The notes below the pieces were generated by a model. It ran no database searches and had not been told where the DNA came from. It saw nothing but the letters and a program-made list of their open reading frames with translations. Positions 62 to 26,588 of a stretch of DNA of 64,000 nucleotides are shown here, piece after piece. The position numbers were made by a program, and so were the translations under genes. How positions within the stretch are numbered: the stretch's first letter is position 1; the number at the start of each line of letters is the position of its first letter. The stretch covers positions 1-64,000 of the IMG/VR virus record IMGVR_UViG_3300042402_002641; one strand, 5' to 3'.

Positions 62-232
62 ATGATGTTTGAAGCATTTATGGTATTCTATTTGTTAGAA
101 TGCCTAGTATTAATCTCTGTGGCAGTTTGGTACTATCATGTGCCTAAAACCGCACCAAAGAAAATATGGAACCCCTGGGGTGAAGTTTGGAACGAAAAGG
201 AGATGACAAATGGACGTGGTAGAGCTGATTAA
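62..232 (+). CDS. small membrane protein (56 aa), not in ORF track
   Basis: ATG at 62 overlaps upstream TGA; MMFEAFMVFYLLECLVLISVAVWYYH.. has one TM segment; overlaps the next gene start. Confidence 0.55.
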   Translation: MMFEAFMVFYLLECLVLISVAVWYYHVPKTAPKKIWNPWGEVWNEKEMTNGRGRAD

Positions 233-539
233 CAAATACGGGTTTCCTATCGTTGCAGCAGGCGGTATGGGCTACATGATTTTCTATGTGTGGACTTGGG
301 CCACCAAAGAAGTCAAGCCTGTGCTTAGTGAGGCCAACACTGTATTGATAGCATTGATTGATCGAATCCGCATGTTGGACAACGATTTAATCAGACTGAA
401 TCAAAAGGTCAATACAGTTCTACATCTGCGTGGTAAGATCATCGAATCAGAGCGTGTGATAGAACAACAGAAAACTGAAGAAGAAGCCAACGCCAAGTTC
501 AAAGATGCATTGGTCGGCACTGAACAATCAAAGAAGTAA
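210..539 (+). CDS. membrane protein, TM plus coiled coil (holin-like/hypothetical)
   Basis: AAGGAG RBS; N-terminal YGFPIVAA TM helix followed by coiled coil. Confidence 0.6.
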   Translation: MDVVELINKYGFPIVAAGGMGYMIFYVWTWATKEVKPVLSEANTVLIALIDRIRMLDNDLIRLNQKVNTVLHLRGKIIESERVIEQQKTEEEANAKFKDALVGTEQSKK

Positions 540-543
540 CAAT

Positions 544-2595
544 CTATTTTGTCGAAGCGTGGAAAATTCCATCCCAATCTTCAGGCAATTTCTGTGTCGA
601 TTGGAACTCGCAACGTTCGATCCACATATCATAATAACCACTTAATCTGCCGTCGAACTGATCTCTCAGCTGTTTGCACATGCTGATTGCGGTACTGAAA
701 TTCTGTGATCTATATGCACCATGCATGGCATTGTGTATTTTCTTAGACACATGGTAGTCAGGAGTGACGTCGTCTAAGACTGTATAGATAGCGATACCTA
801 CTGTCTTGCCCTTGACTGCTAGATCGTCTATTTTTAGAAAGAAGAAATCATCACCACACTGGTCTACTGTGGCCCCACCGACTAATAGCACACACCCATA
901 TTCTTTGCATTTGCTTTCAATACGTGCCGCAGTACTGACAGCATCACCTAGGATATCATAGCTGTGCCTTGCAGTAGATCCCATCTCTCCAATGTAGCCT
1001 AGGCCCGTGTTGATACCTGCACCCATAGCAATAGCAGGACGGCCTTCTGCAACAATCTTATCATTAAATTGTTTTACTGCCTTCAACATGTTAAGTCCTG
1101 TACGAACTGCTGTTTTTGGATGGTTAGGATCTTCAATAGGAGCATTGTGTATGTGCATACTGGCATCACCGATATACTTGATGATCATACCATCAGCATC
1201 TAACACAGGTTGTGTAATAGCATCCATATACCCGTTCATGATACGTGTTAGTCCTTTAACGTCGTCACCGAAACTTTCACCTAATGGTGTAAACCCACGT
1301 AGATCACTAAAACATATTGAAACTTCACGCTTCATTCCATCCTTGATGAGTGCAGGATTCTCAGCAAGCATACGTACAACTGTTGGACTGGCATATCCGG
1401 CAAACTGTTTCTTTATGGCCTGTTTCTGTAGAAACTCACTTACAAACTTGACACCGTAGGCATGCAGAGCGACCAAGATTGTGCCAACAAGAATGGCAGT
1501 AGCGTCAAATAAGAATAGAAAATTAGAGAAAGCGTAGTGACTACCAAAGACCACACCAACACATATAATGATAACACTCGCAAGTCCCGCATATACCCAC
1601 CTCGTTAAAAATAACAATAGTATTCCCACTGCTAGAATCGCAATGATTTCTAAACCATCAGCATAGTCGGGACGCTGTATTACCACACCATTTATCATGG
1701 TGCCAATTGCGGCAGCTTGTGCATCTTGTGGAAATACTGCGCCTTTGGCCGTAGGCAATGGATTACTAATACCAGCGGCTGTTGGGCCTACAATAACTAT
1801 AGCACCATTAAAAGTTTTAGGTAAGTTCATTAGACTCACCTGTTGGTTTTCTTGACTCCAATCGATCCATACACGACCTAGGTTGTCTGTAGTAATAGGA
1901 CCAAACTTAGGTATGCGCATTTTCTCAACGCCACCTTCGTTGAGCTTAACCTGGAACGTAGAGTCGCCAGCAGCAACACGAAGTGTTTCCATAGCGATAC
2001 TAGGATACAGTTTACCGTCTACAGACACAATCAACGGCAGTCTACGATTCACGCCGTCAACTTCTGGTAGTGTGCCAACTATTCCAATGCCTGCTGCCGC
2101 ATTTTCTAATTGGGGTATGTTAGCAATCAGTCCCGGATATTGGACGATTTGGTCCTGCCACTCTGGGCCTAGCACTGCTGAACCTGGATTGCGTGGCGTA
2201 TTTTTTGTTCGTTGGCTAGGCACTGATCCTAGCACTACTGGATATTGTTTTAGAGCCGTTGCGAAAACAGCATCACCACCAGTGCGGTCAGGCTCAGCCA
2301 TGATAACATTGAGCACAACAAGGCCAGCACCACGATTATAGAGATCTTTAATAATTTTTGCATACTCTGCCCTCGGTAAAGGCCATTGACCATATTTGTC
2401 TAAGGCTGCTTCATCTATGTTTACTGCGTAGATGTTATTGGCTGTCGGTGCTTTGGCAGTGATTAAGGTATCGAAGTAGCGTAGTCTTACACTTTCTACA
2501 AAGACAGGATCAGCGATTCTTATACTTATAATAAGTGCTAATGTCAGCAGTGCAGTCCACGGACTAGTTAGGATTTTTTTGATTAGTTTTTGCAT
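544..2595 (-). CDS. CHASE2-domain class III adenylate/guanylate cyclase
   Basis: CHASE2 motif IDEAALDKYGQWPLPR, 3 TM helices, cyclase motifs FSDLRGFT, KYIGDA, GINTG, YDILGDAV; start chosen at MQKLIKK behind TAAATA. Confidence 0.93.
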   Translation of the reverse strand: MQKLIKKILTSPWTALLTLALIISIRIADPVFVESVRLRYFDTLITAKAPTANNIYAVNIDEAALDKYGQWPLPRAEYAKIIKDLYNRGAGLVVLNVIMAEPDRTGGDAVFATALKQYPVVLGSVPSQRTKNTPRNPGSAVLGPEWQDQIVQYPGLIANIPQLENAAAGIGIVGTLPEVDGVNRRLPLIVSVDGKLYPSIAMETLRVAAGDSTFQVKLNEGGVEKMRIPKFGPITTDNLGRVWIDWSQENQQVSLMNLPKTFNGAIVIVGPTAAGISNPLPTAKGAVFPQDAQAAAIGTMINGVVIQRPDYADGLEIIAILAVGILLLFLTRWVYAGLASVIIICVGVVFGSHYAFSNFLFLFDATAILVGTILVALHAYGVKFVSEFLQKQAIKKQFAGYASPTVVRMLAENPALIKDGMKREVSICFSDLRGFTPLGESFGDDVKGLTRIMNGYMDAITQPVLDADGMIIKYIGDASMHIHNAPIEDPNHPKTAVRTGLNMLKAVKQFNDKIVAEGRPAIAMGAGINTGLGYIGEMGSTARHSYDILGDAVSTAARIESKCKEYGCVLLVGGATVDQCGDDFFFLKIDDLAVKGKTVGIAIYTVLDDVTPDYHVSKKIHNAMHGAYRSQNFSTAISMCKQLRDQFDGRLSGYYDMWIERCEFQSTQKLPEDWDGIFHASTK

Positions 2596-2736
2596 GACTA
2601 TATTTATTTGAACCATTCGTTTTAGGTTTAGCAAAAATTCTATTAGTCAACTGTCCGTGATTTTTTTTATCTGCTTCTAGTTGTCGATGTAGGTGTCTTT
2701 TAAAATCGTCGTCTGTCATTGAGTTCCTTAGTTAAT

Positions 2737-3030
2737 TTATATAGGCGTACCAAAATTTGAAACGGAGTTAGAGCCTGTTCCCAATATGCACGTAGTGGTT
2801 GGAGTCATTTTAAGCAATGTCCAGTTTTGAGTTTTTTCATTGATCCAAAGAGAATATACAGATTTATCGTTGACGTGTGAACCTTTCCAGGATAATTTTT
2901 CTTCAAATTCTTTCTCTAGTACTGAGATAATTTTTTGAGTATCGTCACAGACGATAGGATAGTCATATCTGAATTGAGCGTTGGCCGGGCTGGATAAGCA
3001 GACAAGAAACGCCAGTAAAAGCATTCGCAT
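2737..3030 (-). CDS. secreted hypothetical protein
   Basis: AGGAG RBS, signal peptide ending ANA-Q, two Cys in mature part. Confidence 0.7.
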   Translation of the reverse strand: MRMLLLAFLVCLSSPANAQFRYDYPIVCDDTQKIISVLEKEFEEKLSWKGSHVNDKSVYSLWINEKTQNWTLLKMTPTTTCILGTGSNSVSNFGTPI

Positions 3031-3059
3031 TACCAGCTCCTTAAACTAATATTTACCAG

Positions 3060-3542
3060 TTATCTAGTTATCATTGCAAAAGTGAAAAGCACAGTAGGCA
3101 CGGCTATTGCCATAAAACTTGTACCTATAAGTAGTCTATCTATCATGTCGGACTGTGCTTGGATTCTGGCATTTTTTATGTCTGCTTCTAGTTTAGCACG
3201 TTCTTTGTACATTCTCACACGTTCGGCCATCATCTGATCCCACACATCACTGTTCCCGGAATATATCAATAATTCTTTCAGTTGTTTTTCTGCGTCTCTA
3301 AGTGCTTTGCTCTGCATGGCAATTTCTATTGACATGGCTCTAATCTGTCCGTCTGTGAGAATCTTTTTGCTGGTTTGTGCTGCTACATTAGCACTATGAA
3401 TCTTATCGCTGTTTTCAAAGAACTTGGCAAACTGTCCGTAAAGACTGTTGACATCCTTGCCCAGAGCAATGGCTTTTTTAATATAACCTACTGATTGTTG
3501 TGCGGCTGTGAAAGCAAGGCCAATTGTGATAGGATCGATCAT
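3060..3542 (-). CDS. hypothetical phage membrane protein
   Basis: MIDPIT start, coiled coil, C-terminal TM. Confidence 0.7.
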   Translation of the reverse strand: MIDPITIGLAFTAAQQSVGYIKKAIALGKDVNSLYGQFAKFFENSDKIHSANVAAQTSKKILTDGQIRAMSIEIAMQSKALRDAEKQLKELLIYSGNSDVWDQMMAERVRMYKERAKLEADIKNARIQAQSDMIDRLLIGTSFMAIAVPTVLFTFAMITR

Positions 3543-3694
3543 GTTTTCTTAGGATCCTTATCTTTGGGCTGCGGTTTTGACCATTCTACGCAGACGACTT
3601 TTCTACTATAAACATCACCAGTCCATGTCCATTTTACGCACCGAGGTTCGTTGGGGTTTAACCCTGCCAGAAATATGCTTAGAATTAGGTCCAT
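3539..3694 (-). CDS. small Cys/Trp protein (51 aa), not in ORF track
   Basis: GGAG RBS; MDLILSIFLAGLNPNEPRCVKWTWTGDVYSRKVVCVEWSK..; TGA overlaps next ATG (ATGA). Confidence 0.7.
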   Translation of the reverse strand: MDLILSIFLAGLNPNEPRCVKWTWTGDVYSRKVVCVEWSKPQPKDKDPKKT

Positions 3695-3727
3695 TGTCGC
3701 TCCGTACCTGTATGGTATTTAGCGGTA

Positions 3728-5401
3728 TTATTGGCCTTGCGTCACTGTGATTTTGGCACAGCCACCTGCTGTGGTGCAGTTATGTGTAATTGAGTAATAA
3801 TTCTGTGTGCTGCCGCTTTGCGTTAGACTTAGATCAGTAGGTGTGCCGCTTAGATTAACTTTGGCCATATGTCCAGCTGAACCCTGCTGTGTTATATCAA
3901 CATTCTTATTACCGCCACTTAGAGTAATTTCAGCATAATGGCTGCCGCTGTCTTTTTGTTGTACCAGCAAACTATTATTATTACCGCTGACATCAGCAAA
4001 TATTCCTTTAGTACCACCTGTGCTAGTTTGTTGTAAATCTACTGTGTTAAAATTACCCACAACTCTTAAGTCGACATAATTTGCTTGTGTTGCAGCATTT
4101 CCAGTTTGTGTAATATTAATATCATTGCTTAGACCATTGCCGTAGTATTCAACATAATTATTTCTAGTGCCGCTTTGATTTACTTCAACTACGTTCTGTG
4201 TGCCAATTTGTTCTATATGAACCTGACTATCTGCTGTTGTTCTATTGACAAATGTTAAAACTTTGGCTGTGTTAGTAGTCGTAGCGTTAAATGACGCTGC
4301 ACTGCCTCCGCAACATAGGGTATTTGCGGCCGCAGTTACAGGATCAACAATGGTATTGCTAGAAGCAGTTGATGTTGTTGTACTGTTGGCATCGTAGTAA
4401 TAGGTAATCTCAGCAATCTGCATACTGTCACAGTTTAAACCACACCCATCTCCCGCCTTTGTTGTCGGAAATAACATAAAGTAATAAGCATAAGCAGTAG
4501 TATTGCCAATATCTATAACGGCCGAAGTTGTATAGCGAGATTCACTTAAAGAAATTGAATCTTGTTTAATTAATGTCCATGTTGCGCCATCATTGCTTCC
4601 GTAAAGTTTATAACTAGTAGGATCTCGTCCACTAAAATCATTTGCTGTTGTGACTGTAAAATGTGTGACTACTCTACCAGAAGTTAGTTGTATTGTGACT
4701 CCAGCATTCTTTTTATCGAAGTTTAGATATTTTGTGTTAGGATTATTGTCAAAAGCGTTGTTAGGTCCTTCGCTACCAGGGCTGTTATTACTAGTTGGAA
4801 TTGCTCTTATAATATTTACAGTAGCGTTATTCATATAGATTGCCGTAGGAGCAGGCGGTGGCGGCCCGGCCGGCGCGGCAGTTTGACCTGCGGCTAAGGG
4901 AGTCGTTGATCCGTTAGTAGCATAATTATTAACCTGCGCTACTGTTGGGTTCAATGTACCAGTCCATGTAACACCACTTGTGTTGGCAAATCCTTGAGTC
5001 ATACTAAACAACTGTCCGGTGTTATTGTCATTGCCCACAAAGAAGAAATAGTCCGTGCCCATGTTGATAATGTGGCCAGTGCCCATTACTGCTTTTTGCG
5101 TGCCTGCCGATGTGTACTGAATAGCATTCCATGGATTTGTAGCATCTCCAGTGGTGGCAAATTTAACATAGTCGCCAGCGGCCCAACTTAATTGTCCGTT
5201 GTACCAGGGTATTTGATATGCTGTACCTGGGTTTTTACTGTAGATTTGACATGTAGTTGTGTACATACAAGCCTGAACGTTCCATTGACTGTCTGCTATT
5301 TGATATCGTCCAAACTTTAGATCAACAAGGCCTGTTGCTTGACTGTGTGCAGATAAACAGAATGTAATTAGGAATGAAAATATTAGTAAGAACCGTTTCA
5401 T
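3728..5401 (-). CDS. secreted protein: discoidin/F5-8-like carbohydrate-binding domain plus C-terminal curlin-type repeats
   Basis: Signal peptide; NAFDNNPNTKYL..RDPTSYKLYGSNDG..MQIAEI discoidin motif; N-x5-Q-x-G repeats (NVVEVNQSG, NDINITQTG). Confidence 0.8.
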   Translation of the reverse strand: MKRFLLIFSFLITFCLSAHSQATGLVDLKFGRYQIADSQWNVQACMYTTTCQIYSKNPGTAYQIPWYNGQLSWAAGDYVKFATTGDATNPWNAIQYTSAGTQKAVMGTGHIINMGTDYFFFVGNDNNTGQLFSMTQGFANTSGVTWTGTLNPTVAQVNNYATNGSTTPLAAGQTAAPAGPPPPAPTAIYMNNATVNIIRAIPTSNNSPGSEGPNNAFDNNPNTKYLNFDKKNAGVTIQLTSGRVVTHFTVTTANDFSGRDPTSYKLYGSNDGATWTLIKQDSISLSESRYTTSAVIDIGNTTAYAYYFMLFPTTKAGDGCGLNCDSMQIAEITYYYDANSTTTSTASSNTIVDPVTAAANTLCCGGSAASFNATTTNTAKVLTFVNRTTADSQVHIEQIGTQNVVEVNQSGTRNNYVEYYGNGLSNDINITQTGNAATQANYVDLRVVGNFNTVDLQQTSTGGTKGIFADVSGNNNSLLVQQKDSGSHYAEITLSGGNKNVDITQQGSAGHMAKVNLSGTPTDLSLTQSGSTQNYYSITHNCTTAGGCAKITVTQGQ

Positions 5402-6495
5402 GGACGTCTCAACACTCCAGTCTTCTGTACAATGTTTACAACGTTGCCACCCGGATCGCCACTGCCAACAATAGTGTAGGCATATTGATCATCATGACTG
5501 ATGGCGACAAATGTGTTGGAATTGTAGCCTGATGTTTTCACCTCAGCATAGTGATCAATGTTGGTACGATAGGCTATACCGCGTCCTCGACTTTCAATGT
5601 CCGGCGAATCTGACTTTTCCCAAGCCACACACACTGATGTGCTGGGATTGCAACCTGCTCGACCTAGATATTCTTCCAACAATAATAGTCTAGCACGTTC
5701 GATAGATTCGTCTGCTTCACGTGCTCGCTGTGCAATTTGTCGTTGTGCTTCTGCCTCAGCTTCATCGGCTTCTCGGTCTCGTTTGCTGCGTGCCTGTTCT
5801 CGGATGGCCTGTGTGATCTCAGGTGGTGCCAGCAAGATCAAATTGTTGCTGATTTTACTTTCTACAGTGTTGATCACAGTGGGTGCAGTGGGCATGTTGT
5901 TGGCACTGGCCACGAATGTGGCTTCAAATGCCTTATCTAATGTGACTGTACCTGCGTCCGTGGTGACCAAAATACTGCCTACTTTGCAACGGTTTTCCTC
6001 TAGCTCATAGGTCTTGATGTCGCGATCATCCTTGCAACTGGGCACCAACACAATGAGACTCTGTCCAGTTTCGTCCACAGTCATGGTAAAGTCAGTGCCG
6101 CGTACCGCCACAGTGGCAGTGGGGGTTTTGATGTTGACCTGTTGGGGATTGTTTTTGGCGATCTGCCCTGACGCATAACGCACAGTTCCCATGCCTACTT
6201 TCATAGCCAACTTGCCTGCGTCTGAGTTTTTTGGATCGTATACAAAATCGTCAATCACTAGTCTAGAATTCTCAGTGACCTTGACTTTGGTTTCATCACG
6301 AAACGTAATGCTGCTGACGCATGCACCAGTGGTATAAGTGTCCATGCTTTCAATGGCAGCGCCTTTGATGCCAGACAATTTTTTCTTGTTGCGTTCAACT
6401 TCGCAGGCAGTGCCCTTGTTTTCGCTCACCGTGCCAATGCCAGCCCATGCAGGACTCACTGCGGCCAACAACAGTGCCAGCATCAGCCACCGCAC
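5398..6495 (-). CDS. FecR-domain periplasmic protein
   Basis: Signal peptide; FecR signature IKTPTATVAVRGTDFTMTVD. Confidence 0.88.
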   Translation of the reverse strand: MRWLMLALLLAAVSPAWAGIGTVSENKGTACEVERNKKKLSGIKGAAIESMDTYTTGACVSSITFRDETKVKVTENSRLVIDDFVYDPKNSDAGKLAMKVGMGTVRYASGQIAKNNPQQVNIKTPTATVAVRGTDFTMTVDETGQSLIVLVPSCKDDRDIKTYELEENRCKVGSILVTTDAGTVTLDKAFEATFVASANNMPTAPTVINTVESKISNNLILLAPPEITQAIREQARSKRDREADEAEAEAQRQIAQRAREADESIERARLLLLEEYLGRAGCNPSTSVCVAWEKSDSPDIESRGRGIAYRTNIDHYAEVKTSGYNSNTFVAISHDDQYAYTIVGSGDPGGNVVNIVQKTGVLRRP

Positions 6496-6497
6496 TG

Positions 6498-7313
6498 TTA
6501 TCTCGCTATGGCTGACACAGGTGCCACAATGGCTGAACTGCTGGTTCTCACTGTGACAGTGTTGTTGCTGCCTTGTGTTTGAATATTCACAGTAGTGTCG
6601 TTGGTACCTTGTTGCTGTGTGGTAATGCTATTGAAATCGCCCACTGTGGCCATGGCCAATACATGACCGTTGGCGCCAGCTGCATCAATCTGCTGTATGT
6701 TAAACACATTGCTGTCGCCTGTAATAGCGTTGGTCACTGTGCCACGACTGCTGAGCAGGTCACTGGTAATTTGATTGCTGTTGCCAGTGATCGTGGTAGT
6801 AGTGACAATTTCGTTGCCCACTAGATTCTGTATGATCATGTTGCTGTTGCCAGTGATAGTTTCTGTGATCACATTGTCCTGATTGGCCGCTGCATTGACA
6901 TTGCCCACAGTCAATCTAGTTTGATTGCTGTTGCCTGTCACAGTGCTGTTGTAGGTGTTGAGATTGCCCATGATGTTGTACTGCGCAGAGTTAGCATTGC
7001 CGGTCTGCGTGATACCTACTATGTTGTTGCTGCCTGTAATGGTGCCATAGTTACTGGCACTAGGTGCGTCTGGAGTCAGTGTAGTGATACCTGTGCCAGC
7101 CACTACGGTGGCCGTGGTTGTGGTCACTCCGCCAACATTGTTGGTGCCACCAACTTGTTCAATGGTAATAACGTTACTGCTACCAACCTGCTCAATATAG
7201 ACCTTATTAGGTCCTGTAGCAGATTGTGCCCAGACTAAGCTGGTTCCTAGAACCATTACTGCTGCGAGTAATTTTCTCGACAACTCGCTATTGCCTGTCA
7301 TTCTTTTTTTCAT
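6498..7313 (-). CDS. curlin-repeat protein (CsgA/CsgB-like)
   Basis: Signal peptide; N/Q/G/T-rich repeats NKVYIEQVG, NVITIEQVG, NIVGITQTG; downstream of csgG/csgF. Confidence 0.8.
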   Translation of the reverse strand: MKKRMTGNSELSRKLLAAVMVLGTSLVWAQSATGPNKVYIEQVGSSNVITIEQVGGTNNVGGVTTTTATVVAGTGITTLTPDAPSASNYGTITGSNNIVGITQTGNANSAQYNIMGNLNTYNSTVTGNSNQTRLTVGNVNAAANQDNVITETITGNSNMIIQNLVGNEIVTTTTITGNSNQITSDLLSSRGTVTNAITGDSNVFNIQQIDAAGANGHVLAMATVGDFNSITTQQQGTNDTTVNIQTQGSNNTVTVRTSSSAIVAPVSAIAR

Positions 7314-7469
7314 CTTGTGTCTAATGTTGGTTTATTATTTGCCAACAAGTTCCTTGGTCTAAGACCGTTAATGTTCCTTGTAATTTATTTAATACTCACT
7401 GCACAAAAATTAAATGCCGCTGTTAAAATTCTTACATGTGTATTTTCCAACATGTAAAAATATCAACAC

Positions 7470-8774
7470 TTATGGCTTAATTGGACTCAACATACTAATT
7501 GGAACGAATCCTTTTTTGCCATCTCGAGTTTGTACCTTAACCCAATTATTATCAACTTCAATTACTTTTACTTCTGTGCCTTTTAAAAACAACCATTGCC
7601 TTGTGCTTGCTTCGATAGCTTTGGCTCTAACATAATACGGCTCTTTAAAAAATTTCACGTCACCAACTTTGACTTCTTCTTTTGGTGTTACTGTTGGTAC
7701 TGCTGCTGGCGCTGGTGGAACAACTGTTGTAATAGGTTTGACATCATTTTTAGGTTCCTCCTTCTTTACTTCTGGCTTGATTTCTGGCTTGATTTCTGGC
7801 TTGATTTCAGGTTTGACTTCTGGTGCGGGCTCGTTAGCTTTGCCTGTTCCATTGCCTTGTCCGCCATTGGACTGCTGTGGTGCGGGGTTAGGTGCACTTT
7901 TGGTGGGGGCGGATTCTTTGGGGGTTTGTGTTTGAACCAACTCATTCTTTTCCTCCTTGAAACTCCAATGTCCTTTACGGGCACCTTCATTAATAGTCTG
8001 GACCACTGCTGCCTGCACAGCTACGTCCACTGCTCGGTTGATACTTTCGTTAATGCTGCCGCCAATCTCACCTTCCACGGCATTGGCATTGGCTCCTAGT
8101 GTGGTGCCATCGCCCACGAAACGCAGCAAGGTCAATTTGTCCATGTAGCTCAACACAGTTTTGGTCACGGTCACAGTTGTGAGTATTTCACCAGTGGCCA
8201 CACTAACTGTTCTTAGAGTCACTGTCACTGTGTCGCTTTGATATTGTGTTGATGCACCAATACCAAAAATTCTCACACCCGAACCACCTGTGAGTGTATT
8301 CGAATCGTAGCCAACAATACCACCTTCCATAATGATACCAGCAAACATCATTGGCGGTAGCGATTTGGCATCCTTACCTTGATACTGTTCACGCATCTGA
8401 CGAATCATCTGTCGTTCTTTGATCAGATTGTCCAGTCCCCCACGTTCTAATACAGTGAACCAACGTTGATCACCTACGTCTTGCAGAGCTTTGATTAGAT
8501 AGTTTTCAGCGCCCTGTGTCACAGCTGAACTCAAACTAGCAATCAAGGGCTGGCTTTTACGTTGTCCTGTTAGATCACGGAACCCATAAACAGCCACAGC
8601 CACTGGCCCGCCTTGTGGTGGTCGTAGTTTGTTTTGTTCTTGCTTTAGAAACTTACTGGCTTCGACTCGAGGTGCATCAAATTGATTGCTGGTTATTTTT
8701 TCACGTACGGCTGAACTTGATGCGCAACCAGATAATACTGCCACTACTGCTAGAGATATCAATGTGTGTTTCAT
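7470..8774 (-). CDS. csgG: curli secretion channel CsgG with Pro-rich linker and C-terminal SH3-like domain
   Basis: Lipobox LSGC; VAVYGFRDLTGQRK, STAVTQG-like SSAVTQGA, FTVLERGGLDNLIKERQMIR; C-terminal WVKVQTRDGKKGFVP. Confidence 0.92.
   Translation of the reverse strand: MKHTLISLAVVAVLSGCASSSAVREKITSNQFDAPRVEASKFLKQEQNKLRPPQGGPVAVAVYGFRDLTGQRKSQPLIASLSSAVTQGAENYLIKALQDVGDQRWFTVLERGGLDNLIKERQMIRQMREQYQGKDAKSLPPMMFAGIIMEGGIVGYDSNTLTGGSGVRIFGIGASTQYQSDTVTVTLRTVSVATGEILTTVTVTKTVLSYMDKLTLLRFVGDGTTLGANANAVEGEIGGSINESINRAVDVAVQAAVVQTINEGARKGHWSFKEEKNELVQTQTPKESAPTKSAPNPAPQQSNGGQGNGTGKANEPAPEVKPEIKPEIKPEIKPEVKKEEPKNDVKPITTVVPPAPAAVPTVTPKEEVKVGDVKFFKEPYYVRAKAIEASTRQWLFLKGTEVKVIEVDNNWVKVQTRDGKKGFVPISMLSPIKP
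7770..7823 (-). repeat. 12-bp tandem repeat encoding (KPEI/V)n in the CsgG linker
   Basis: ttctggcttgat units on the plus strand; protein EVKPEIKPEIKPEIKPEVK. Confidence 0.85.
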
Positions 8775-8777
8775 TGC

Positions 8778-9260
8778 TTATCCCCCAAATCCAAACGTAC
8801 CACTTGGCACTGTAATTTCTGTAAACTGCCTAGGATCCAAGACGTTTTCAATTCTAACAACAATGTTAGTTCCTACTACTTTCCACGTGATGTTGTTGCC
8901 TGCAACTTCCATTTGTCCGCAATTTCCTGCACTATTGGCTGAACACACCGGCACTCCGTCGACTCCAAACAGACTATCTGTGATCTGTTTTGCCAACTGT
9001 GAATAGATACGGCTTTCCAAGTTGGCTTGAAACTTGGCCTGTGGAGTGTTTAATGCATCGCTTTCTGCTTTTGCTTTAAGTGCATCGGCGGCGTTTTTGT
9101 TTTTGTCTCTGGCCTGTGTTTCTAGTTGATGTATTGTGAGTACGTGTGAACTGTAGCCAATGCCTGAAAAGGATGGACTATTAAAACTGTGTTGTAATTC
9201 TGCTGCGCCGACCATTGATGATGCAATAATCAACACGGCGGTGGTTGTAGACTTAACCAT
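8778..9260 (-). CDS. csgF: curli assembly protein CsgF
   Basis: Signal peptide then ELQHSFNSPSFSG (CsgF F-x-N-P-x-F-G-G-like), F..NLESRIYSQLA; directly upstream of csgG. Confidence 0.85.
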   Translation of the reverse strand: MVKSTTTAVLIIASSMVGAAELQHSFNSPSFSGIGYSSHVLTIHQLETQARDKNKNAADALKAKAESDALNTPQAKFQANLESRIYSQLAKQITDSLFGVDGVPVCSANSAGNCGQMEVAGNNITWKVVGTNIVVRIENVLDPRQFTEITVPSGTFGFGG

Positions 9261-9350
9261 CGATTCGCTCCCGGTAGTTACTATTAGTATTTACACGGTG
9301 AGGATGAAGAATTATGTGACGAGTTTAATCTAGATTAAAAAGGTAATTAA

Positions 9351-10445
9351 TTACGGTACCTTAACCTGCATACCATTTTGAGCACCACCATTAAGCCCTA
9401 TTTTTTGTATGATCATCGTTTGTGCGAATTGTTCAGCAGTTTCGATATAGATAGTGGTTCCAGAACCTGTATTTATGAACAGTATGCCCTTGAATTCGTC
9501 ATGTTTTTTGTAGTAATCAAATGCGTATCTTTTTTGTGCGGCAATAAATGAATCGAATAAAACCATACCTTTATTATTAACAGGTGCTACTAACTGTTGA
9601 AGTTCTGCAGGAGTAGCATCAAGATAGATTGAATTAATAATGCCACTTAGAGAAGTTCTAATAAATTTCACTACCCCGGCGGCCGGTGCGCCTGCAGCGA
9701 TTAACGATGGTCCGAAATTGGTCCAAAAATCTGAAGTTTTTCCTACATTTACATTCGATGGTGCATTTATTGCTGTTTTCAATTTAAGTTTCTTAGGAAG
9801 TGCTGCTGCTGAAGTTTTTACCGCGGTTAGAGTAGAGGAACTGTTTCCATATCCTCTCACTCCCTTTATCCTTCCGCCATTGCCCTTCACCTCGATTAAT
9901 TTTCCATTTATTACTAAATCACCTGCATCTTTGCTTAACATAATATTAGGACTACAGATAGCCAAAAACATTTCGCCTGGACCTTTTTGTGTTTTTGTTT
10001 TACCTGTTTTAAATAGTCCTTGAATGGCAATCAGCTCTGGAGCAACTTGTTTATACACATTAGGAAATTGTGTTTGAATTATAGATTCGAGATTTAGTGA
10101 AACACCCGGGGATAACAATTTTTTAATATTGATAATTCCTTTTGTTGCCAGTTCCATAGCAAACCCTTCTTTTTCTTCGTAGGGTGCTTTGGCATCAATT
10201 ATTGCTCTGGATACAACCGTATGAACTTGTCGCAGATCTTCATCTTTTTGTAGAATGGTGTCTACACCACCACCAATATCAATTTTACGGACATAAGAAT
10301 AAATCTGATGTAGTTCGTCTATATCAGTTACTACATCAATTTTATTAATGATTGCTTGTTTAACATTTGTTAATGCACTAGAATCTCCAGCATTACTCGC
10401 CGATTTCGCACTAATTTTTTCTGCTATAAATTCATATTTTCTCAT
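9351..10445 (-). CDS. PD-(D/E)XK restriction-endonuclease-like protein
   Basis: GPGE..GDLVINGKLIEVKG motif; start MRKYEFIAE behind TAAATA. Confidence 0.6.
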   Translation of the reverse strand: MRKYEFIAEKISAKSASNAGDSSALTNVKQAIINKIDVVTDIDELHQIYSYVRKIDIGGGVDTILQKDEDLRQVHTVVSRAIIDAKAPYEEKEGFAMELATKGIINIKKLLSPGVSLNLESIIQTQFPNVYKQVAPELIAIQGLFKTGKTKTQKGPGEMFLAICSPNIMLSKDAGDLVINGKLIEVKGNGGRIKGVRGYGNSSSTLTAVKTSAAALPKKLKLKTAINAPSNVNVGKTSDFWTNFGPSLIAAGAPAAGVVKFIRTSLSGIINSIYLDATPAELQQLVAPVNNKGMVLFDSFIAAQKRYAFDYYKKHDEFKGILFINTGSGTTIYIETAEQFAQTMIIQKIGLNGGAQNGMQVKVP

Positions 10446-10453
10446 ACAATTAT

Positions 10454-11137
10454 TTAGCGGATTTCTGGAAACAGGCATTCCTGGATAAAATGCTGAACAT
10501 CATCCTCACTTAACCCTAAACTTACCATCACCCGTGGTGTATGCGGGTTACATTTTTGATTTTGTGCGTAGTAGTTCTGTGCTTCTGTGGTATTTTCAGC
10601 GGTATTATTAGTTTCCGCTACTGTGCTTAGATAGTGTTCTATGGTAGTTCGAGCTAGATCTGTGATCTGTTCTAATTCTTCTTCATCACTGACATTGCCC
10701 GCAGCTACCATGCTGCCACTGAATATATTAGTAGCCCATTCAGGTAATGCACGTTGTTTGCGCCATTCCAGTTTGGCCACTTCATCTGCAAACCATTGCA
10801 TCATAGGATGGTCAGCATCGCCTGCTTTTGAGTAATCGTGGAAACAGCCTGTGATCTTATTCTTGCCGGCAATAACATCAAAGCCGTAAATTGGAGCAGG
10901 ATTGTGCGTATGCGGGAAGATACAACAGTGCATCATCCACAAGCCTTTAGTTTCTCTAGCGTCTACTACATCAACGTGAGCACGACGATACCGATCACTA
11001 GTCCACACACGATTAACCCAGCCAGGCTGATTAAATCTTTCCATTCCAGGCTCATCAATCTCTTGACCCGTACGGCTGAAGTTATCTTCCAGTAGATGTT
11101 GGATCTCAATTAGTGTGTCCCAAACCTTACTCTCCAC
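10454..11137 (-). CDS. pcyX: ferredoxin-dependent bilin reductase, PcyX-type (PcyA family)
   Basis: RRAHVD..WMMHCCIFP..PIYGFD..NPHT; Asp56 at the PcyA Glu76 position, His70 and Asp87 retained; downstream of heme oxygenase. Confidence 0.85.
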   Translation of the reverse strand: MESKVWDTLIEIQHLLEDNFSRTGQEIDEPGMERFNQPGWVNRVWTSDRYRRAHVDVVDARETKGLWMMHCCIFPHTHNPAPIYGFDVIAGKNKITGCFHDYSKAGDADHPMMQWFADEVAKLEWRKQRALPEWATNIFSGSMVAAGNVSDEEELEQITDLARTTIEHYLSTVAETNNTAENTTEAQNYYAQNQKCNPHTPRVMVSLGLSEDDVQHFIQECLFPEIR

Positions 11138-11672
11138 GATATAGGTCCCGCATCATCTTAATAGCATATTCAAATGCTAAACGAGCTTCGTCTCCTAAAT
11201 CGTCAGTGAGCAATTCTCTGATAGCCATCTTCATAGAATCTGCGTTTTCGAACTCGTAGAACTTGCCGCTTGAAATATGTGCTACCTGTTTCTTAATGAT
11301 TTGACCACCGAACAAGTCGCCCATATGACGGCAGTATAAATGCGCCTTAATAAGATGTTTGCGTTCTTGATCATTGCCTAACCTGTGTAAGTATGCTTGG
11401 TATTCTAGTGTAGCAGGAGTTAGATAGTAGTATTCACATTCATCTAATTCTGTGAAGTCTGCATAGATGGCCTTAAGTCTTGGTAGATCATGCATGTTAG
11501 CAAAAAATCCTTGACGCTTGCTATACCATTCAATTGGATCATATATGGCCAAAAGATTATAGAGATAGTTTCTGTAGTCTTGTTTTTCAATCTTGCCGCT
11601 GAGTAATATCTTGGCAAACTTTGTTGTTTCTGCTTCGTGATGCAGATCTTTGGTAATTTCTCTCAGGCTCAT
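11127..11672 (-). CDS. hemO: heme oxygenase
   Basis: LREITKDLHHEAE proximal His; AHLYCRHMGDLFGGQII distal helix. Confidence 0.92.
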   Translation of the reverse strand: MSLREITKDLHHEAETTKFAKILLSGKIEKQDYRNYLYNLLAIYDPIEWYSKRQGFFANMHDLPRLKAIYADFTELDECEYYYLTPATLEYQAYLHRLGNDQERKHLIKAHLYCRHMGDLFGGQIIKKQVAHISSGKFYEFENADSMKMAIRELLTDDLGDEARLAFEYAIKMMRDLYRGE

Positions 11673-11968
11673 TCCTGCTCCACTGAGATTCGCAATGGCG
11701 AACCATTCTGTCTTGCTATTGTTGTGGCTTCGATGCCTTTTTGCTCTGCTATCTCAAAAGGATATATGCCTACTATAGAACTACCGGTTTCGTGTATCTC
11801 TAGAGTGATTTCTTTGGCTTTGGATTCTGTGTGTTTAAAAATACCTGTGAGTAGTTCTATGACTAGTTCCATAGGAGTTTTATCGTCATTGAGAAATATC
11901 ACCTTCCACAACCTCGGGGGAGCTAACTGAACTGTGGTTTTTTCTTTGACTTCAATTTCTGTAGACAT
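11669..11968 (-). CDS. clpS: Clp protease adaptor ClpS
   Basis: WKVIFLNDDKTPMELV..IHETG..YPFEIAEQK. Confidence 0.93.
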   Translation of the reverse strand: MSTEIEVKEKTTVQLAPPRLWKVIFLNDDKTPMELVIELLTGIFKHTESKAKEITLEIHETGSSIVGIYPFEIAEQKGIEATTIARQNGSPLRISVEQE

Positions 11969-11999
11969 TTACGATCCTGGGTTTATTGATGTATTTAAC

Positions 12000-12020
12000 A
12001 AGAGAGGTTTCCCTCTCTTG
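12000..12020 (-). terminator. hairpin after hsp20
   Basis: aagagagg-tttc-cctctctt inverted repeat. Confidence 0.55.
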
Positions 12021-12027
12021 TAGTATA

Positions 12028-12462
12028 CTACTTTACATCAACAATGTCAATGACCTTAGGCTTGGCTGATTCTGGAATGTTACGAATCAACTTCACGGTT
12101 AGCATGCCATTCTTGGTTTCCGCACCTACCACCTCGATGTGTTCTGCCAGAGGAAATTCTTTGACAAAATCACGAGTTGCGAGACCGCGATGCATGTACT
12201 GATCTGCTGCATAGTCTGTTGTTTGGCTTTCCCCTTTAACAACAAGAACGTTGCTTTCAACTGTTACTGAAATCTCGGTCTTATCAAAACCAGTCACAGC
12301 TAGTTGAATCGCATATTCGTTTTCGTCTAATTTTATTATATTATGTGGAGGATAGTTATTTGATACACTGTTGGCAAATCTGCGTTCCATTTGATCAAAC
12401 ATCGTGTCAAATCCCACAAGTGCTCTGTTTAGAGCATCTATTCTAGCTAATTGATTGTTCAT
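12028..12462 (-). CDS. small heat shock protein Hsp20 (IbpA-like)
   Basis: NYPPHNI..LAVTGF..HRGLATRDF..NGMLTVKL. Confidence 0.95.
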   Translation of the reverse strand: MNNQLARIDALNRALVGFDTMFDQMERRFANSVSNNYPPHNIIKLDENEYAIQLAVTGFDKTEISVTVESNVLVVKGESQTTDYAADQYMHRGLATRDFVKEFPLAEHIEVVGAETKNGMLTVKLIRNIPESAKPKVIDIVDVK

Positions 12463-12466
12463 AGTA

Positions 12467-12487: not shown

Positions 12488-12519
12488 AATAAGGGCCTCG
12501 AAAGTACCCTTGTTTATGA

Positions 12520-26538: not shown

Positions 26539-26588
26539 AATATTTCCTTTAAACTTATAATATATAGCTAAAAATTTTAGGTAATCAT

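What the first reader, a model, noticed from the sequence alone, without database searches (positions are those of the whole stretch)
544..9260. Phage curli-export operon wired to a FecR protein and a CHASE2 cyclase: candidate surface-sensing cyclic-nucleotide system
Seen: co-oriented csgF, csgG, curlin, fecR and lectin-curlin genes, three or four small membrane/secreted genes, then a CHASE2 cyclase; no csgE, csgC or csgD. Established: csgF/csgG have been reported in marine SAR11-type myophages, and CHASE2 cyclases are transmembrane receptors (in Sinorhizobium, CyaD1/CyaD2/CyaK with NsrA limit secondary infection). Inference: exported amyloid or lectin subunits sense surface contact or other virions and relay through the periplasmic FecR protein to CHASE2, raising cAMP to control superinfection, aggregation or lysis timing. 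A curli pore used as a signalling input would be new to me.
Basis: partly seen in the sequence, partly recalled or inferred. Interest (0 to 1): 0.85.

Follow-up and report, generated by a model that had tools for sequence, protein, structure and literature searches.

The report
Phage curli cassette with FecR and cyclase
A 280-kb environmental phage carries a complete curli fibre export cassette joined to a FecR-like periplasmic protein and a membrane adenylate cyclase; this gene set was published for ocean phages in 2022, but how its parts are wired is still untested and is now easier to test.

Summary
On the minus strand of 544-9293 lie csgF, csgG, a curlin, a secreted FecR-domain protein, a lectin-bearing curlin, four small ORFs and a CHASE2 class III adenylate cyclase. 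There is no csgE, csgC or csgD.

The cassette is not new. HTVC008M and Melnitz carry it, and Wittmers et al. 2022 (PMC9599517) described CsgF-CsgG-CsgA/B-FecR-CsgA/B-AC across pelagiphages. In IMG/VR samples the co-occurrence is near-complete.

What I add:
- The nearest cellular cyclase homologues often sit beside a TPR outer-membrane-type protein and a FecR-like gene. One group also has a Crp gene nearby. This resembles the S. meliloti NsrA/CyaK pathway.
- The FecR protein models as a PupR-like signalling domain, a long helix and a small C-terminal beta domain.
- FecR co-varies mainly with CsgF/CsgG and only weakly with CHASE2.
- The cassette splits into three promoter-like and recombination units.
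- Three abutting TGTT-N8-AACA palindromes (Crp/Clr-box geometry) and a covarying RNA leader precede the curlin gene.

Best reading: late-expressed adhesive curli, with FecR linking the secretion machine to the cyclase. The link is inferred, not shown. It is a new member of a known kind, of moderate interest.

The parts
9288..9293 (-). TAAATA promoter-like motif 33 nt upstream of csgF
   Evidence: In the window, 19 of the 38 TAAATA hexamers lie within 80 nt upstream of ATG-started ORFs of at least 90 aa on the same strand. The motif resembles the T4-type late promoter core (my own knowledge).
8778..9260 (-). csgF (160 aa, signal peptide)
   Evidence: Pfam CsgF E 3.7e-8 and PHROG 35372 E 1.7e-31. 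Present upstream of the cyclase in 61 of 82 loci.
7470..8774 (-). csgG lipoprotein pore (434 aa): CsgG core 57-271, a Pro/Glu/Lys-rich repeat linker, and a C-terminal SH3 domain at about residues 382-432 (five overlapping Pfam SH3 models)
   Evidence: Pfam CsgG 2e-45 and SH3_3 1.9e-7. LSGC lipobox. E. coli CsgG structures at 3.7e-44, with the constriction triad Y51/N55/F56 replaced by Q/S/L (alignment; the triad's identity is from my own knowledge). 23 of 52 distinct phage CsgGs are at least 380 aa.
7421..7468 (-). Three abutting 16-bp palindromes of TGT-N10-ACA type (family consensus TGTTGAAATTTTAACA), starting 2 nt after the csgG stop
   Evidence: The double-box pattern occurs in 19 of 227 fetched sequences (226 loci plus the window; 2.8 Mb in all; about 0.6 expected), and in 17 of them it lies directly after csgG. 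It has the same TGTT-N8-AACA form as the published S. meliloti Clr box.
7386..7391 (-). Invariant TAAATA promoter-like motif of the curlin transcription unit
   Evidence: Invariant in all 14 aligned intergenic regions. Motif enrichment.
7325..7366 (-). Conserved 5' leader: hairpin 1 (7366-7356), conserved AAGGAACT, hairpin 2 (7347-7325)
   Evidence: Alignment. RNAalifold predicts hairpin 2, and 5 of its 6 pairs show compensatory changes. Covariation in hairpin 1 was seen by eye only. No Rfam family matches.
6498..7313 (-). Curlin 1 (271 aa, signal peptide, about 8 imperfect curlin-type repeats)
   Evidence: Repeat motifs. Curlin_rpt E 0.027 for this protein; 45 of 47 family members hit it. Weak hit to PDB 8c50, a curlin repeat protein, E 0.59.
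5398..6495 (-). Secreted FecR-domain protein (365 aa): beta domain 21-195, long helix 225-280, C-terminal beta domain 289-357
   Evidence: Pfam FecR 5e-10. AF2 model pLDDT 80. Foldseek PupR CCSSD 6ovk E 1.9e-4 and adhesin anchoring domain 5ix9 E 0.029. The stop/start with curlin 2 overlaps or is within 5 nt in 37 of 39 loci.
3728..5401 (-). Curlin 2 (557 aa): signal peptide, N-terminal domain, F5/8 type C (discoidin) lectin domain 203-316, C-terminal curlin repeats about 390-557
   Evidence: Family scan: 23 of 45 hit Curlin_rpt, 14 F5/8 type C, 5 PA14, 1 GLEYA.
3060..3694 (-). Two overlapping small ORFs (51 aa; 160 aa with a C-terminal TM segment). These are movable cargo, not core cassette.
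   Evidence: In L009, L011, L012, L014, L025 and L027 the same pair lies downstream of the cyclase on the opposite strand.
3050..3055 (-). TAAATA promoter-like motif 25 nt upstream of the 97-aa ORF
2737..3030 (-). s97: secreted 97-aa protein with two invariant cysteines; a recurrent neighbour of the cyclase
   Evidence: Found next to the cyclase in 18 of 82 loci: directly upstream in most, about 2 kb upstream in L057, directly downstream in L048, L058 and L061. AF2 pLDDT 82 with an alpha+beta fold. No significant PDB fold match, best E 0.44. It shares the 80.6 %-identical block with the cyclase in L003.
2564..2719 (-). 51-aa basic ORF overlapping the cyclase start; doubtful gene
   Evidence: Found only in L003 among 82 loci.
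544..2595 (-). CHASE2 class III adenylate cyclase (683 aa from the ATG at 2595; the ORF is listed from a TTG at 2634). CHASE2 is about nt 2544-1621 and the catalytic domain about nt 1332-802.
   Evidence: Pfam and topology. 52 % identical to the Melnitz cyclase and 35 % to HTVC008M's. In 74 distinct phage cyclases both metal Asp, the Lys and the Arg are invariant. The Asp+Ser pair replaces the Thr/Ser+Asn pair in 66 of 74.

Best explanation
This is a phage-borne type VIII (curli) secretion cassette of the kind already described in pelagiphages. It sits in a 280-kb uncultivated phage.

Shown:
- It encodes a CsgG lipoprotein pore and CsgF.
- It encodes two secreted curlin-repeat subunits. The second carries glycan-binding modules.
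- It encodes a secreted FecR/PupR-like protein embedded between the two curlin genes.
- It encodes a membrane CHASE2 adenylate cyclase with an otherwise intact catalytic set, except that the transition-state Asn is Ser.
- The cassette is made of three units: csgFG; curlin-FecR-curlin; s97-cyclase. Each is preceded by the phage's TAAATA promoter-like motif.

Inferred:
- Late in infection the cell exports adhesive, lectin-decorated curli fibres.
- The FecR-like protein bridges the periplasm. Its C-terminal beta domain faces the CsgF/CsgG machine or curlin in transit. Its long helix acts as a spacer. Its PupR-like N-domain faces the CHASE2 domain.
- In this way cAMP synthesis reports the state of secretion or fibre assembly. 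This would be analogous to outer-membrane-protein-to-CHASE2-cyclase signalling in Sinorhizobium (NsrA to CyaK/CyaD).
- cAMP then acts through host receptors, because no phage cNMP-binding protein was found. One possible target is the triple TGTT-N8-AACA operator in front of the curlin unit.
For: Identity of the parts.

Published precedent for the whole cluster, including metatranscriptome expression.

Conserved synteny and co-occurrence.

Tight coupling of the middle unit: fecR-to-curlin 2 in 37 of 39 loci and curlin 1-to-fecR in 32 of 39.

Cellular relatives of the cyclase:
- In Hyphococcus and a Caulobacterales MAG the operon runs TPR/beta-barrel-type protein, FecR protein, CHASE2-AC. In Hyphococcus (L097) a Crp gene lies about 1 kb downstream; the Caulobacterales locus (L095) ends at the cyclase gene.
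- FecR-like plus TPR genes also flank the cyclases in L229 and L232. They match the phage FecR_N HMM at E 3e-21 and 8e-23.
- One bacterial locus (L230) has two curlin-repeat proteins beside a TPR protein and a CHASE2-AC.

Literature:
- LysM-FecR next to a CHASE2 histidine kinase in Burkholderia.
- SMc02177 (FecR) next to CyaD1 in S. meliloti.
- NsrA outer-membrane protein required for CHASE2 cyclase activation.

Structure: the FecR model has an N-domain like the PupR cell-surface-signalling domain, a 55-residue helix, and a small C-terminal domain. A 62-column match to the pore-anchoring domain of an RTX adhesin is probably this C-terminal domain.

Co-variation by partial Mantel tests:
- FecR_C with CsgF, r 0.42.
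- FecR_N with CHASE2, r 0.23, p about 0.003, controlling for CsgG, CsgF and FecR_C.
- FecR_C with CHASE2, none, although it is physically nearer to the cyclase gene.

Operator-like boxes and leader.
Against: There is no direct evidence of any protein contact or of cAMP output.

- FecR co-varies mainly with CsgF (rho 0.74-0.79) and CsgG (0.65). It co-varies only 0.37 with CHASE2 and 0.05 with the catalytic domain.
- The curli+FecR block and the s97+cyclase block are exchanged independently. L003 shares the cyclase side at 81 % but FecR at only 48 %.
- Each block exists alone in a few phages: L030 and L079 have the cyclase only; L123 and L126 have no cyclase within 5-6 kb. Wittmers et al. report FecR without AC in many podophages.
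- Three of eight sampled bacterial CHASE2 cyclases have no FecR or TPR neighbour.
- S. meliloti smc02177 was not required for perception of the tested signal.
- Partial Mantel tests on related sequences overstate significance.
- The transition-state Asn is Ser in this clade, so activity and product are unproven.
- Three abutting 16-bp sites are sterically odd for Crp dimers, and they occur only in a sub-clade (17 loci).
- The curlin-like look of the FecR C-terminus is weak: hhalign probability 33 % and no Pfam Curlin_rpt hit.
Confidence: 0.45

Rival explanations
1. There are two independent modules that merely share a hypervariable island. FecR is a curli accessory factor, acting as a functional stand-in for CsgE, CsgC or CsgB (secretion adaptor, chaperone or fibre anchor/nucleator). 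The s97+CHASE2 cyclase unit is a separate auxiliary gene pair. It raises host cAMP in response to some unrelated periplasmic cue in order to reprogramme metabolism.
For: - Strong FecR co-variation with CsgF/CsgG and weak co-variation with the cyclase.
- Independent recombination of the two blocks.
- Separate TAAATA motifs.
- FecR is translationally coupled to the curlins, not to the cyclase.
- A variable cargo region of up to about 3.4 kb lies between curlin 2 and the cyclase.
- Each block is found alone in some phages.
- Podophage clusters often lack the AC.
- The FecR C-terminus is faintly curlin-like.
- csgE and csgC are absent.
Against: - The cyclase follows the curli block on the same strand in 24 of 24 loci with at least 7 kb of downstream DNA. 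This holds across cassettes as divergent as 35-50 % identity, which is hard to explain without a functional tie.
- FecR-like genes neighbour the homologous cyclases in bacteria that have no csgG nearby.
- The FecR N-domain is a signalling-type fold, not a known chaperone fold.
Confidence: 0.3
2. Exported curlin or lectin subunits act as extracellular sensors of surfaces, neighbouring cells or virions. The contact signal is passed inward through the CsgG pore and FecR to CHASE2, in order to time lysis or block superinfection.
For: - Curlin 2 carries swappable glycan-binding modules: F5/8 type C, PA14 and GLEYA.
- There is an S. meliloti precedent for an external protein signal reaching CHASE2 cyclases via an outer-membrane protein.
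- A holin-like ORF lies beside the cyclase.
Against: - No known mechanism transmits a signal inward along a curli fibre or through a CsgG channel about 1 nm wide.
- Lectin modules are equally expected for plain adhesion.
- Nothing in the sequence distinguishes outside-in sensing from monitoring of periplasmic secretion load.
Confidence: 0.1
3. The pore-only reading (Buchholz et al. 2022). CsgG/CsgF is repurposed as a gated pore or pinholin that depolarises or permeabilises the envelope to time lysis. Alternatively, it is an uptake channel for nutrients or iron complexes, with FecR acting as an iron regulator (Zaragoza-Solas 2020; Wittmers 2022).
For: - These are published suggestions.
- The CsgG constriction residues are changed to Q/S/L.
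- The CsgE gate is absent.
- The TAAATA motifs resemble T4 late promoters.
Against: - Curlin substrates are present and conserved: 45 of 47 and 23 of 45 family members hit Curlin_rpt. The system is therefore not pore-only.
- The phage FecR has a cleavable signal peptide and no cytoplasmic anti-sigma domain.
- No FecA-type transducer or ECF sigma factor is in the cassette.
Confidence: 0.07

Closest known systems
Pelagiphage T8SS (curli) cluster with FecR and adenylate cyclase (Wittmers et al. 2022, mSystems, PMC9599517). Instances: Pelagibacter phage HTVC008M and Methylophilales phage Melnitz.
   Same: Same gene order: csgF, csgG, curlin, FecR, curlin, cyclase. Protein identities are 35-52 % for the cyclase, 42-45 % for CsgG and 44-49 % for the FecR N-domain. 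csgE, csgC and csgD are absent.
   Different: - The host phage here is a 280-kb contig with 43 % GC and a beta-type two-piece tmRNA.
- CsgG has a repeat linker plus an SH3 tail.
- Curlin 2 has a discoidin lectin domain.
- Four small ORFs are inserted before the cyclase.
- A triple-palindrome element and a structured leader precede the curlin gene.
- The gene upstream of csgF shows no histidine-kinase domain.
- The published account reads FecR as an iron regulator and does not mention CHASE2.
Sinorhizobium meliloti NsrA / CyaD1-CyaD2-CyaK / Clr pathway, and the TPR-barrel-type, FecR, CHASE2-AC (plus Crp) operons of Hyphococcus and relatives
   Same: A CHASE2 class III cyclase with the same topology. 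A FecR-domain secreted protein is encoded beside it. An outer-membrane component is required upstream in S. meliloti. The output is cAMP.
   Different: - Only 25-29 % identity to the Hyphococcus-group cyclases.
- The outer-membrane partner here would be a CsgG/CsgF secretion pore, not a TPR/beta-barrel protein.
- No Crp/Clr gene was found in the phage DNA examined.
- The role of the FecR neighbour in signalling is unproven even in S. meliloti.
Escherichia coli / Salmonella curli system (csgBAC-csgDEFG)
   Same: CsgG nonameric-pore family, with E 3.7e-44 to the solved structures. CsgF is present, as are secreted Gln/Asn/Gly-rich curlin repeats.
   Different: - No CsgE, CsgC or CsgD.
- The constriction residues differ.
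- One subunit is fused to lectin modules.
- FecR and cyclase genes are embedded in the cluster.
- The cassette is encoded by a virus whose known relatives infect hosts without curli genes.
FecR/PupR cell-surface signalling anti-sigma regulators
   Same: The periplasmic domain has the same fold: Foldseek 6ovk E 1.9e-4 and 4m0h E 4.8e-4, plus a Pfam FecR hit.
   Different: There is no N-terminal cytoplasmic anti-sigma domain or membrane anchor; the protein has a cleavable signal peptide instead. A long helix and an extra C-terminal beta domain are added. No TonB-dependent transducer or ECF sigma factor is nearby.

Membership tests
Phage T8SS-FecR-AC cluster (Wittmers 2022) | Co-oriented csgF, csgG, curlin, FecR, second curlin, adenylate cyclase on a viral genome | tested here: met
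   The window is 100 % identical to IMG/VR UViG 3300042402_002641. Ribonucleotide reductase, DNA ligase and tail-like genes are also in the window.
Phage T8SS-FecR-AC cluster (Wittmers 2022) | Histidine kinase gene directly upstream of csgF (reported as universal in the podophage version) | tested here: not met
   The upstream 375-aa ORF and its 477-634-aa counterparts in nine related loci have no informative Pfam match. Two of these counterparts, and the window ORF, were also scanned against PHROGs without a match. The window ORF has no convincing PDB sequence match.
Curli / type VIII secretion system | CsgG-family outer-membrane lipoprotein pore | tested here: met
   Pfam CsgG 2e-45, PDB CsgG 3.7e-44, LSGC lipobox.
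Curli / type VIII secretion system | CsgF partner | tested here: met
   Pfam CsgF 34 bits against a cut-off of 25.8. No PDB sequence hit.
Curli / type VIII secretion system | Secreted subunits built of curlin repeats | tested here: met
   The window's curlin 1 is below the Pfam cut-off on its own (14.9 against 20.7 bits). However, 45 of 47 homologues hit Curlin_rpt at E up to 0.1 (best 2e-8), and 23 of 45 curlin 2 homologues hit at E up to 0.01. Repeat motifs are visible.
Curli / type VIII secretion system | Accessory genes csgE, csgC (or csgH) and regulator csgD | tested here: not met
   No Pfam hit among the cassette ORFs. The fold of s97 matches nothing in the PDB.
Curli / type VIII secretion system | CsgG constriction triad Tyr51/Asn55/Phe56 (E. 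coli numbering; the triad is from my own knowledge) | tested here: not met
   The aligned residues are Gln/Ser/Leu.
Curli / type VIII secretion system | Formation of extracellular amyloid fibres | not testable with these tools
   Needs Congo red or ThT staining, or electron microscopy, of expressing or infected cells.
CHASE2 class III adenylate cyclases (CyaD1/CyaK type) | TM, periplasmic CHASE2, TM bundle, cytoplasmic class III domain | tested here: met
CHASE2 class III adenylate cyclases (CyaD1/CyaK type) | Complete catalytic set: two metal Asp, adenine-specifying Lys and Asp/Thr, transition-state Asn and Arg | tested here: inconclusive
   Asp, Asp, Lys, Asp and Arg are present. The Asn is Ser in the window and in 66 of 74 distinct phage homologues, always paired with Asp at the specificity site. 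The other 8 homologues and the bacterial relatives have Thr/Ser plus Asn.
CHASE2 class III adenylate cyclases (CyaD1/CyaK type) | Dedicated Crp/Clr-type cAMP receptor encoded nearby | tested here: not met
   A jackhmmer search seeded with the Hyphococcus Crp finds none in the 64-kb window or in the phage loci. The rest of the 280-kb genome was not examined.
FecR/PupR cell-surface signalling regulators | Periplasmic FecR-type domain | tested here: met
   Pfam 40.1 bits against a cut-off of 24. Foldseek 6ovk and 4m0h.
FecR/PupR cell-surface signalling regulators | N-terminal cytoplasmic anti-sigma domain, a single TM anchor, and a partner ECF sigma factor and TonB-dependent transducer | tested here: not met
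   The protein starts with a cleavable signal peptide followed directly by the FecR domain. No such partners are among the cassette ORFs.

The most novel reading that the evidence does not exclude
The cassette is a self-contained trans-envelope feedback circuit. The curli secretion machine, or curlin in transit, is read by the FecR-like bridge. The bridge gates the CHASE2 cyclase. The resulting cAMP acts through a host Crp/Clr-family protein at the three TGTT-N8-AACA boxes in front of the curlin-FecR-curlin unit. In this way the phage tunes production of adhesive fibres to secretion capacity late in infection. This would make a type VIII secretion pore part of a second-messenger signalling pathway.
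Probability: 0.15. Interest if true: 0.8.

Novelty: new member of a known kind. Interest (0 to 1): 0.5.

Why it matters
Homologues of this cassette are very abundant in environmental phages. More than 6,000 clusters at 90 % identity match the FecR protein, at least 579 IMG/VR contigs carry the cyclase, and published work found it at all 65 GOV2 stations. Its function is still unknown.

If the FecR-like protein really couples a curli pore to a CHASE2 cyclase, three things follow:
- It would explain a cluster that has puzzled three published studies.
- It would give CHASE2, a sensor domain with no known ligand, a defined protein partner.
- It would show a virus installing both an adhesive surface organelle and a second-messenger input in its host. 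That bears on aggregation, particle formation and phage transmission in plankton.

The bacterial TPR/FecR/CHASE2-AC operons and the operator-like boxes found here offer concrete handles for experiments. If the two modules are independent, the finding is an ordinary new instance of a published cassette.

Tried and rejected
- DNA-level search of the cassette against 50,697 phage records found nothing. Relatives appeared only at protein level.
- Sigma-70 promoter and intrinsic terminator scans were at chance level. The exact T4 late motif TATAAATA was also not enriched. The shorter TAAATA proved informative.
- I tested whether the FecR C-terminus is a curlin repeat. hhalign gave only 33 % probability and no member hit Curlin_rpt, so this is left as inconclusive.
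- I tested whether s97 is a CsgC/CsgE/CsgH analogue. There was no fold match.
- I looked for the histidine kinase reported in podophage clusters. The genes upstream of csgF have no recognisable domains, and no podophage instance was identified among the fetched loci. Whether that kinase carries CHASE2 therefore remains unanswered.
- I looked for a phage-encoded cNMP-binding protein and found none.
- I looked for TGTT-N8-AACA boxes upstream of the bacterial TPR/FecR/cyclase operons. Nothing was informative.
- The FecR homologue search returned only close phage relatives, so bacterial context had to be reached through the cyclase instead.
- The NsrA paper (PMC5952392) is not held, so I could not check the domain make-up of NsrA.

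Full report
**1. What is there**

The window is 100 % identical to part of IMG/VR contig UViG_3300042402_002641, which is 280 kb long. GC content is about 43 %. The window encodes ribonucleotide reductase, DNA ligase and tail-like proteins.

All cassette genes lie on the minus strand.
- csgF, 9260-8778: Pfam CsgF E 3.7e-8.
- csgG, 8774-7470: CsgG E 2e-45, an LSGC lipobox, and E 3.7e-44 to the E. coli CsgG structures. It has a Pro/Glu/Lys-rich repeat linker and a C-terminal SH3 domain.
- Curlin 1, 7313-6498.
- A FecR-domain protein with a cleavable signal peptide, 6495-5398: Pfam FecR E 5e-10.
- Curlin 2, 5401-3728: an N-terminal domain, an F5/8 type C lectin domain (E 4e-11) and C-terminal curlin repeats.
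- Four small ORFs.
- A CHASE2 class III cyclase, 2595-544: CHASE2 E 3.8e-38 and cyclase domain E 9.4e-15. The topology is TM, CHASE2, three TM segments, then the cyclase domain.

Gene spacing is tight: csgF to csgG 3 nt, curlin 1 to fecR 2 nt, and fecR overlaps curlin 2 by 4 nt. The exception is a 156-nt gap between csgG and curlin 1. No ORF hits CsgE, CsgC, CsgD or CsgH.

The window's curlin 1 is below the Pfam cut-off on its own (E 0.027). However, 45 of 47 homologues hit Curlin_rpt, and so do 23 of 45 curlin 2 homologues. Curlin 2 homologues also carry swappable F5/8 type C (14), PA14 (5) or GLEYA (1) modules.

**2. It is a known cassette**

HTVC008M and Melnitz have the same six genes in the same order, and their records already annotate the curli genes and the cyclase. 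The FecR domain and the second curlin are named only in the Melnitz record; HTVC008M lists both as hypothetical proteins.
- Zaragoza-Solas et al. 2020 and Buchholz et al. 2022 discussed only the CsgG/F pore.
- Wittmers et al. 2022 described HK-CsgF-CsgG-CsgA/B-FecR-CsgA/B-AC in podo- and myo-pelagiphages. They surveyed GOV2, found transcripts, and noted that FecR, HK and AC are not part of bacterial curli operons.
- They read FecR as an iron regulator and did not mention CHASE2 or membrane topology.

**3. Co-occurrence**

At least 579 IMG/VR contigs encode relatives of the cyclase. Among the best 80 plus the two isolates, 62 show csgG and 63 show FecR near the cyclase: upstream on the same strand in all but three loci, where the block is inverted (L010, L043, L081). 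Most of the rest simply lack upstream sequence.

I also built a sample anchored on a FecR motif, independent of the cyclase.
- 67 of 67 loci with enough upstream DNA have csgG.
- 33 of 37 loci with at least 5 kb downstream have the cyclase on the same strand.
- 24 of 24 loci with at least 7 kb downstream do.

There are exceptions. L030 and L079 have the cyclase in another context. L123 and L126 have the curli block with no cyclase within 5-6 kb.

**4. Modular structure**

Comparison with L003 and L038 shows a mosaic. L003 shares both flanks at about 81-82 % nucleotide identity. One flank is the upstream genes; the other is s97 plus the cyclase. Its csgF-to-curlin core, however, is only about 68 % identical in short patches.

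The hexamer TAAATA occurs 38 times in the window on both strands. Nineteen of these lie within 80 nt upstream of ORF starts, including csgF, curlin 1 and s97. The cassette therefore looks like three units: csgFG; curlin 1-FecR-curlin 2; s97-cyclase. TAAATA resembles the T4-type late promoter core (my own knowledge), which would place expression late in infection. That timing is an inference.

The interval between curlin 2 and the cyclase is a variable cargo site. The 51-aa and 160-aa pair found there in the window lies downstream of the cyclase, on the other strand, in six related loci.

Only the 97-aa secreted protein (s97) is a recurrent neighbour of the cyclase, in 18 of 82 loci. It has two invariant cysteines and a confident alpha+beta model, but no PDB fold match.

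**5. The cyclase**

Both metal-binding Asp, the adenine-specifying Lys and the transition-state Arg are invariant in 74 distinct phage homologues. The second specificity residue is Asp, so the enzyme is an adenylate-cyclase type. The transition-state Asn is Ser in the window and in 66 of 74 homologues, always together with Asp. The other eight homologues, and the bacterial relatives, have Thr/Ser plus Asn. The pattern indicates selection on an active enzyme, but activity and product are unproven.

**6. The FecR protein**

The AlphaFold model has a mean pLDDT of 80. It shows a beta domain at 21-195, a helix at 225-280 and a small beta domain at 289-357.
- Foldseek's best matches are the PupR C-terminal cell-surface-signalling domain (6ovk, E 1.9e-4) and a FecR-type anti-sigma factor (4m0h).
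- A 62-column match to 5ix9 (E 0.029, TM 0.72 on the target) points to the outer-membrane-pore anchoring domain of the Marinomonas RTX adhesin. That this match corresponds to the C-terminal domain is my inference from its size.
- The protein lacks the anti-sigma and TM parts of true FecR proteins.
- Its C-terminal consensus looks faintly like a curlin repeat, but the test was inconclusive.
- fecR is translationally coupled to curlin 2 in 37 of 39 loci.

**7. Who FecR goes with**

I compared pairwise divergences across 52 distinct cassettes.
- FecR tracks CsgF (rho 0.74-0.79) and CsgG (0.65).
- It tracks CHASE2 only weakly (0.37) and the catalytic domain not at all (0.05).
- CHASE2 and the catalytic domain are themselves only weakly linked (0.24).

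Partial Mantel tests leave two residual signals. FecR_N associates with CHASE2 at r 0.23 (p about 0.003). FecR_C associates with CsgF at r 0.42. FecR_C shows no association with CHASE2, although it is physically nearer to the cyclase gene. This fits a bridge with its C-end at the pore and its N-end at the sensor. The effects are small, however, and such tests are liberal on related sequences.

**8. Cellular relatives**

High-identity hits in genome collections are MAG contigs carrying the same cassette, probably binned phage.

Genuine bacteria give a different picture. In Hyphococcus and a Caulobacterales MAG (25-29 % identity across the group) the operon is DUF3307, a TPR protein with Slam/DUF2860-type barrel similarity, a FecR-domain protein of about 800 aa, and CHASE2-AC. 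In Hyphococcus a Crp-family gene lies about 1 kb downstream; the Caulobacterales locus ends at the cyclase gene.

I then sampled six further CHASE2 cyclases from the 50 % representative library.
- L229 and L232 have a TPR gene plus a FecR-like gene next to the cyclase. They match the phage FecR_N HMM at E 3e-21 and 8e-23.
- L230 has a TPR gene plus two curlin-repeat proteins.
- L227, L228 and L233 have neither.

The literature adds three points.
- LysM-FecR lies next to a CHASE2 histidine kinase in Burkholderia and P. aeruginosa.
- The FecR-domain gene SMc02177 lies beside cyaD1 (SMc02176) and clr (SMc02175). However, smc02177 is not needed to perceive the plant signal.
- The outer-membrane protein NsrA is needed for activation of the CHASE2 cyclases.

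So 'outer-membrane protein plus FecR-like protein plus CHASE2 sensor' is a recurrent, though not universal, cellular module. The phage version would have a curli pore in the outer-membrane position.

**9. A regulatory element inside the cassette**

Two nucleotides after the csgG stop lie three abutting 16-bp palindromes of the TGT-N10-ACA type, at 7468-7421. The family consensus is TGTTGAAATTTTAACA.

The double-box pattern occurs in 19 of 227 fetched sequences (226 loci plus the window), which total 2.8 Mb, against about 0.6 expected. In 17 of them it lies directly after csgG, including cassettes whose proteins are only 36-55 % identical to the window's.

The boxes are followed by four further elements, then the curlin 1 start codon:
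- a conserved AACAGCGG block;
- an invariant TAAATA;
- a hairpin with apparent covariation (seen by eye), followed by a conserved AAGGAACT;
- a second hairpin in which 5 of 6 pairs show compensatory changes.

No Rfam family matches. TGTT-N8-AACA is the published Clr box of S. meliloti and has the geometry of Crp-family sites. This suggests, but does not show, that cAMP feeds back on curlin expression through a host Crp-family protein.

Three caveats apply. The sites abut. They occur only in the sub-clade with a long spacer. No phage cNMP-binding protein was found.

**10. Verdict**

The cassette is a new member of a published kind, not a new kind.

The most likely function is production of adhesive, lectin-decorated curli on infected cells. 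The FecR-like protein probably couples the secretion machine to a CHASE2 adenylate cyclase (confidence about 0.45). The main rival is that FecR is a curli accessory and the cyclase unit is independent (about 0.3).

The specific idea that extracellular fibres sense contact is untested. The pore-only and iron readings are disfavoured by the complete set of curlin genes and by the domain make-up of the FecR protein.

Noticed in passing
window 7314-7469 (minus strand): There are three abutting TGT-N10-ACA palindromes, an invariant TAAATA, and a two-hairpin leader with compensatory base changes upstream of the curlin gene. The arrangement is conserved in 17 loci directly after csgG. The boxes have the form of the S. 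meliloti Clr box.
   Followed up: yes
window, whole; e.g. 9293-9288, 7391-7386, 3055-3050, and upstream of the ORF starts at 11968, 36265, 41117 and 57591: The hexamer TAAATA behaves like this phage's promoter core. 19 of its 38 occurrences lie within 80 nt upstream of ORF starts on the same strand. The exact T4 motif TATAAATA is not enriched.
   Followed up: partly
window 26573-27050 (minus strand): The phage encodes a permuted (two-piece) tmRNA. It matches the Rfam families tmRNA_permuted and beta_tmRNA, and its tag ends in RFALAA. Melnitz has a comparable tmRNA. This hints at a betaproteobacterial host or gene source.
   Followed up: no
window 10454-14424 (minus strand); also L214 and L160: A cluster of ferredoxin-dependent bilin reductase, heme oxygenase, ClpS, Hsp20 and DnaK lies upstream of the cassette. 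In other loci the bilin reductase is a recurrent neighbour one gene upstream of csgF. The gene between them (375-634 aa) has no recognisable domain.
   Followed up: partly
window 544-2595; alignment of 74 distinct phage cyclases: Two catalytic positions co-vary. Asp at the specificity site goes with Ser at the transition-state site (66 sequences). Thr/Ser goes with Asn (8 sequences and the bacterial relatives).
   Followed up: partly
window 7470-7960 (C-terminal part of csgG): CsgG carries a repeat linker rich in Pro, Glu and Lys (PEIK-type units) and a C-terminal SH3 domain. 23 of 52 distinct phage CsgGs are similarly long. The long-tailed CsgGs are the ones followed by the palindrome array.
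   Followed up: partly
window 210-539 (+) and 3060-3694 (-): The 109-aa ORF convergent with the cyclase has a weak holin-family PHROG hit (E 6e-4). In related phages the 51-aa and 160-aa (C-terminal TM) pair sits beside it. Together they may be a lysis-related trio that has been rearranged in this phage.
   Followed up: no
L230 2931-8208 (Logan SRR29564156 contig): This apparently bacterial contig has two paralogous secreted curlin-repeat proteins (40 % identical to each other). They lie next to a TPR protein and a CHASE2 adenylate cyclase, with no csgG in the 6 kb seen.
   Followed up: partly
L038 10004-10208: L038 has the closest relative of the window's curli block (95-97 % protein identity). 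Its cyclase has an indel near the 5' end, and its longest ORF is only 591 aa, so the gene may be disrupted.
   Followed up: no
L030 and L079, about 9960-12055: These two phage contigs carry the cyclase (about 57-66 % identical) with no csg or FecR gene within 10 kb upstream. In both, a conserved multi-TM ORF of about 240 aa lies beside it on the opposite strand.
   Followed up: partly
L233 2550-7213: This bacterial CHASE2 cyclase is flanked by a class II cyclic-nucleotide phosphodiesterase (with an Apyc1-like hit) and a GAF-HD protein. It is a different, self-contained cAMP module with no FecR.
   Followed up: no
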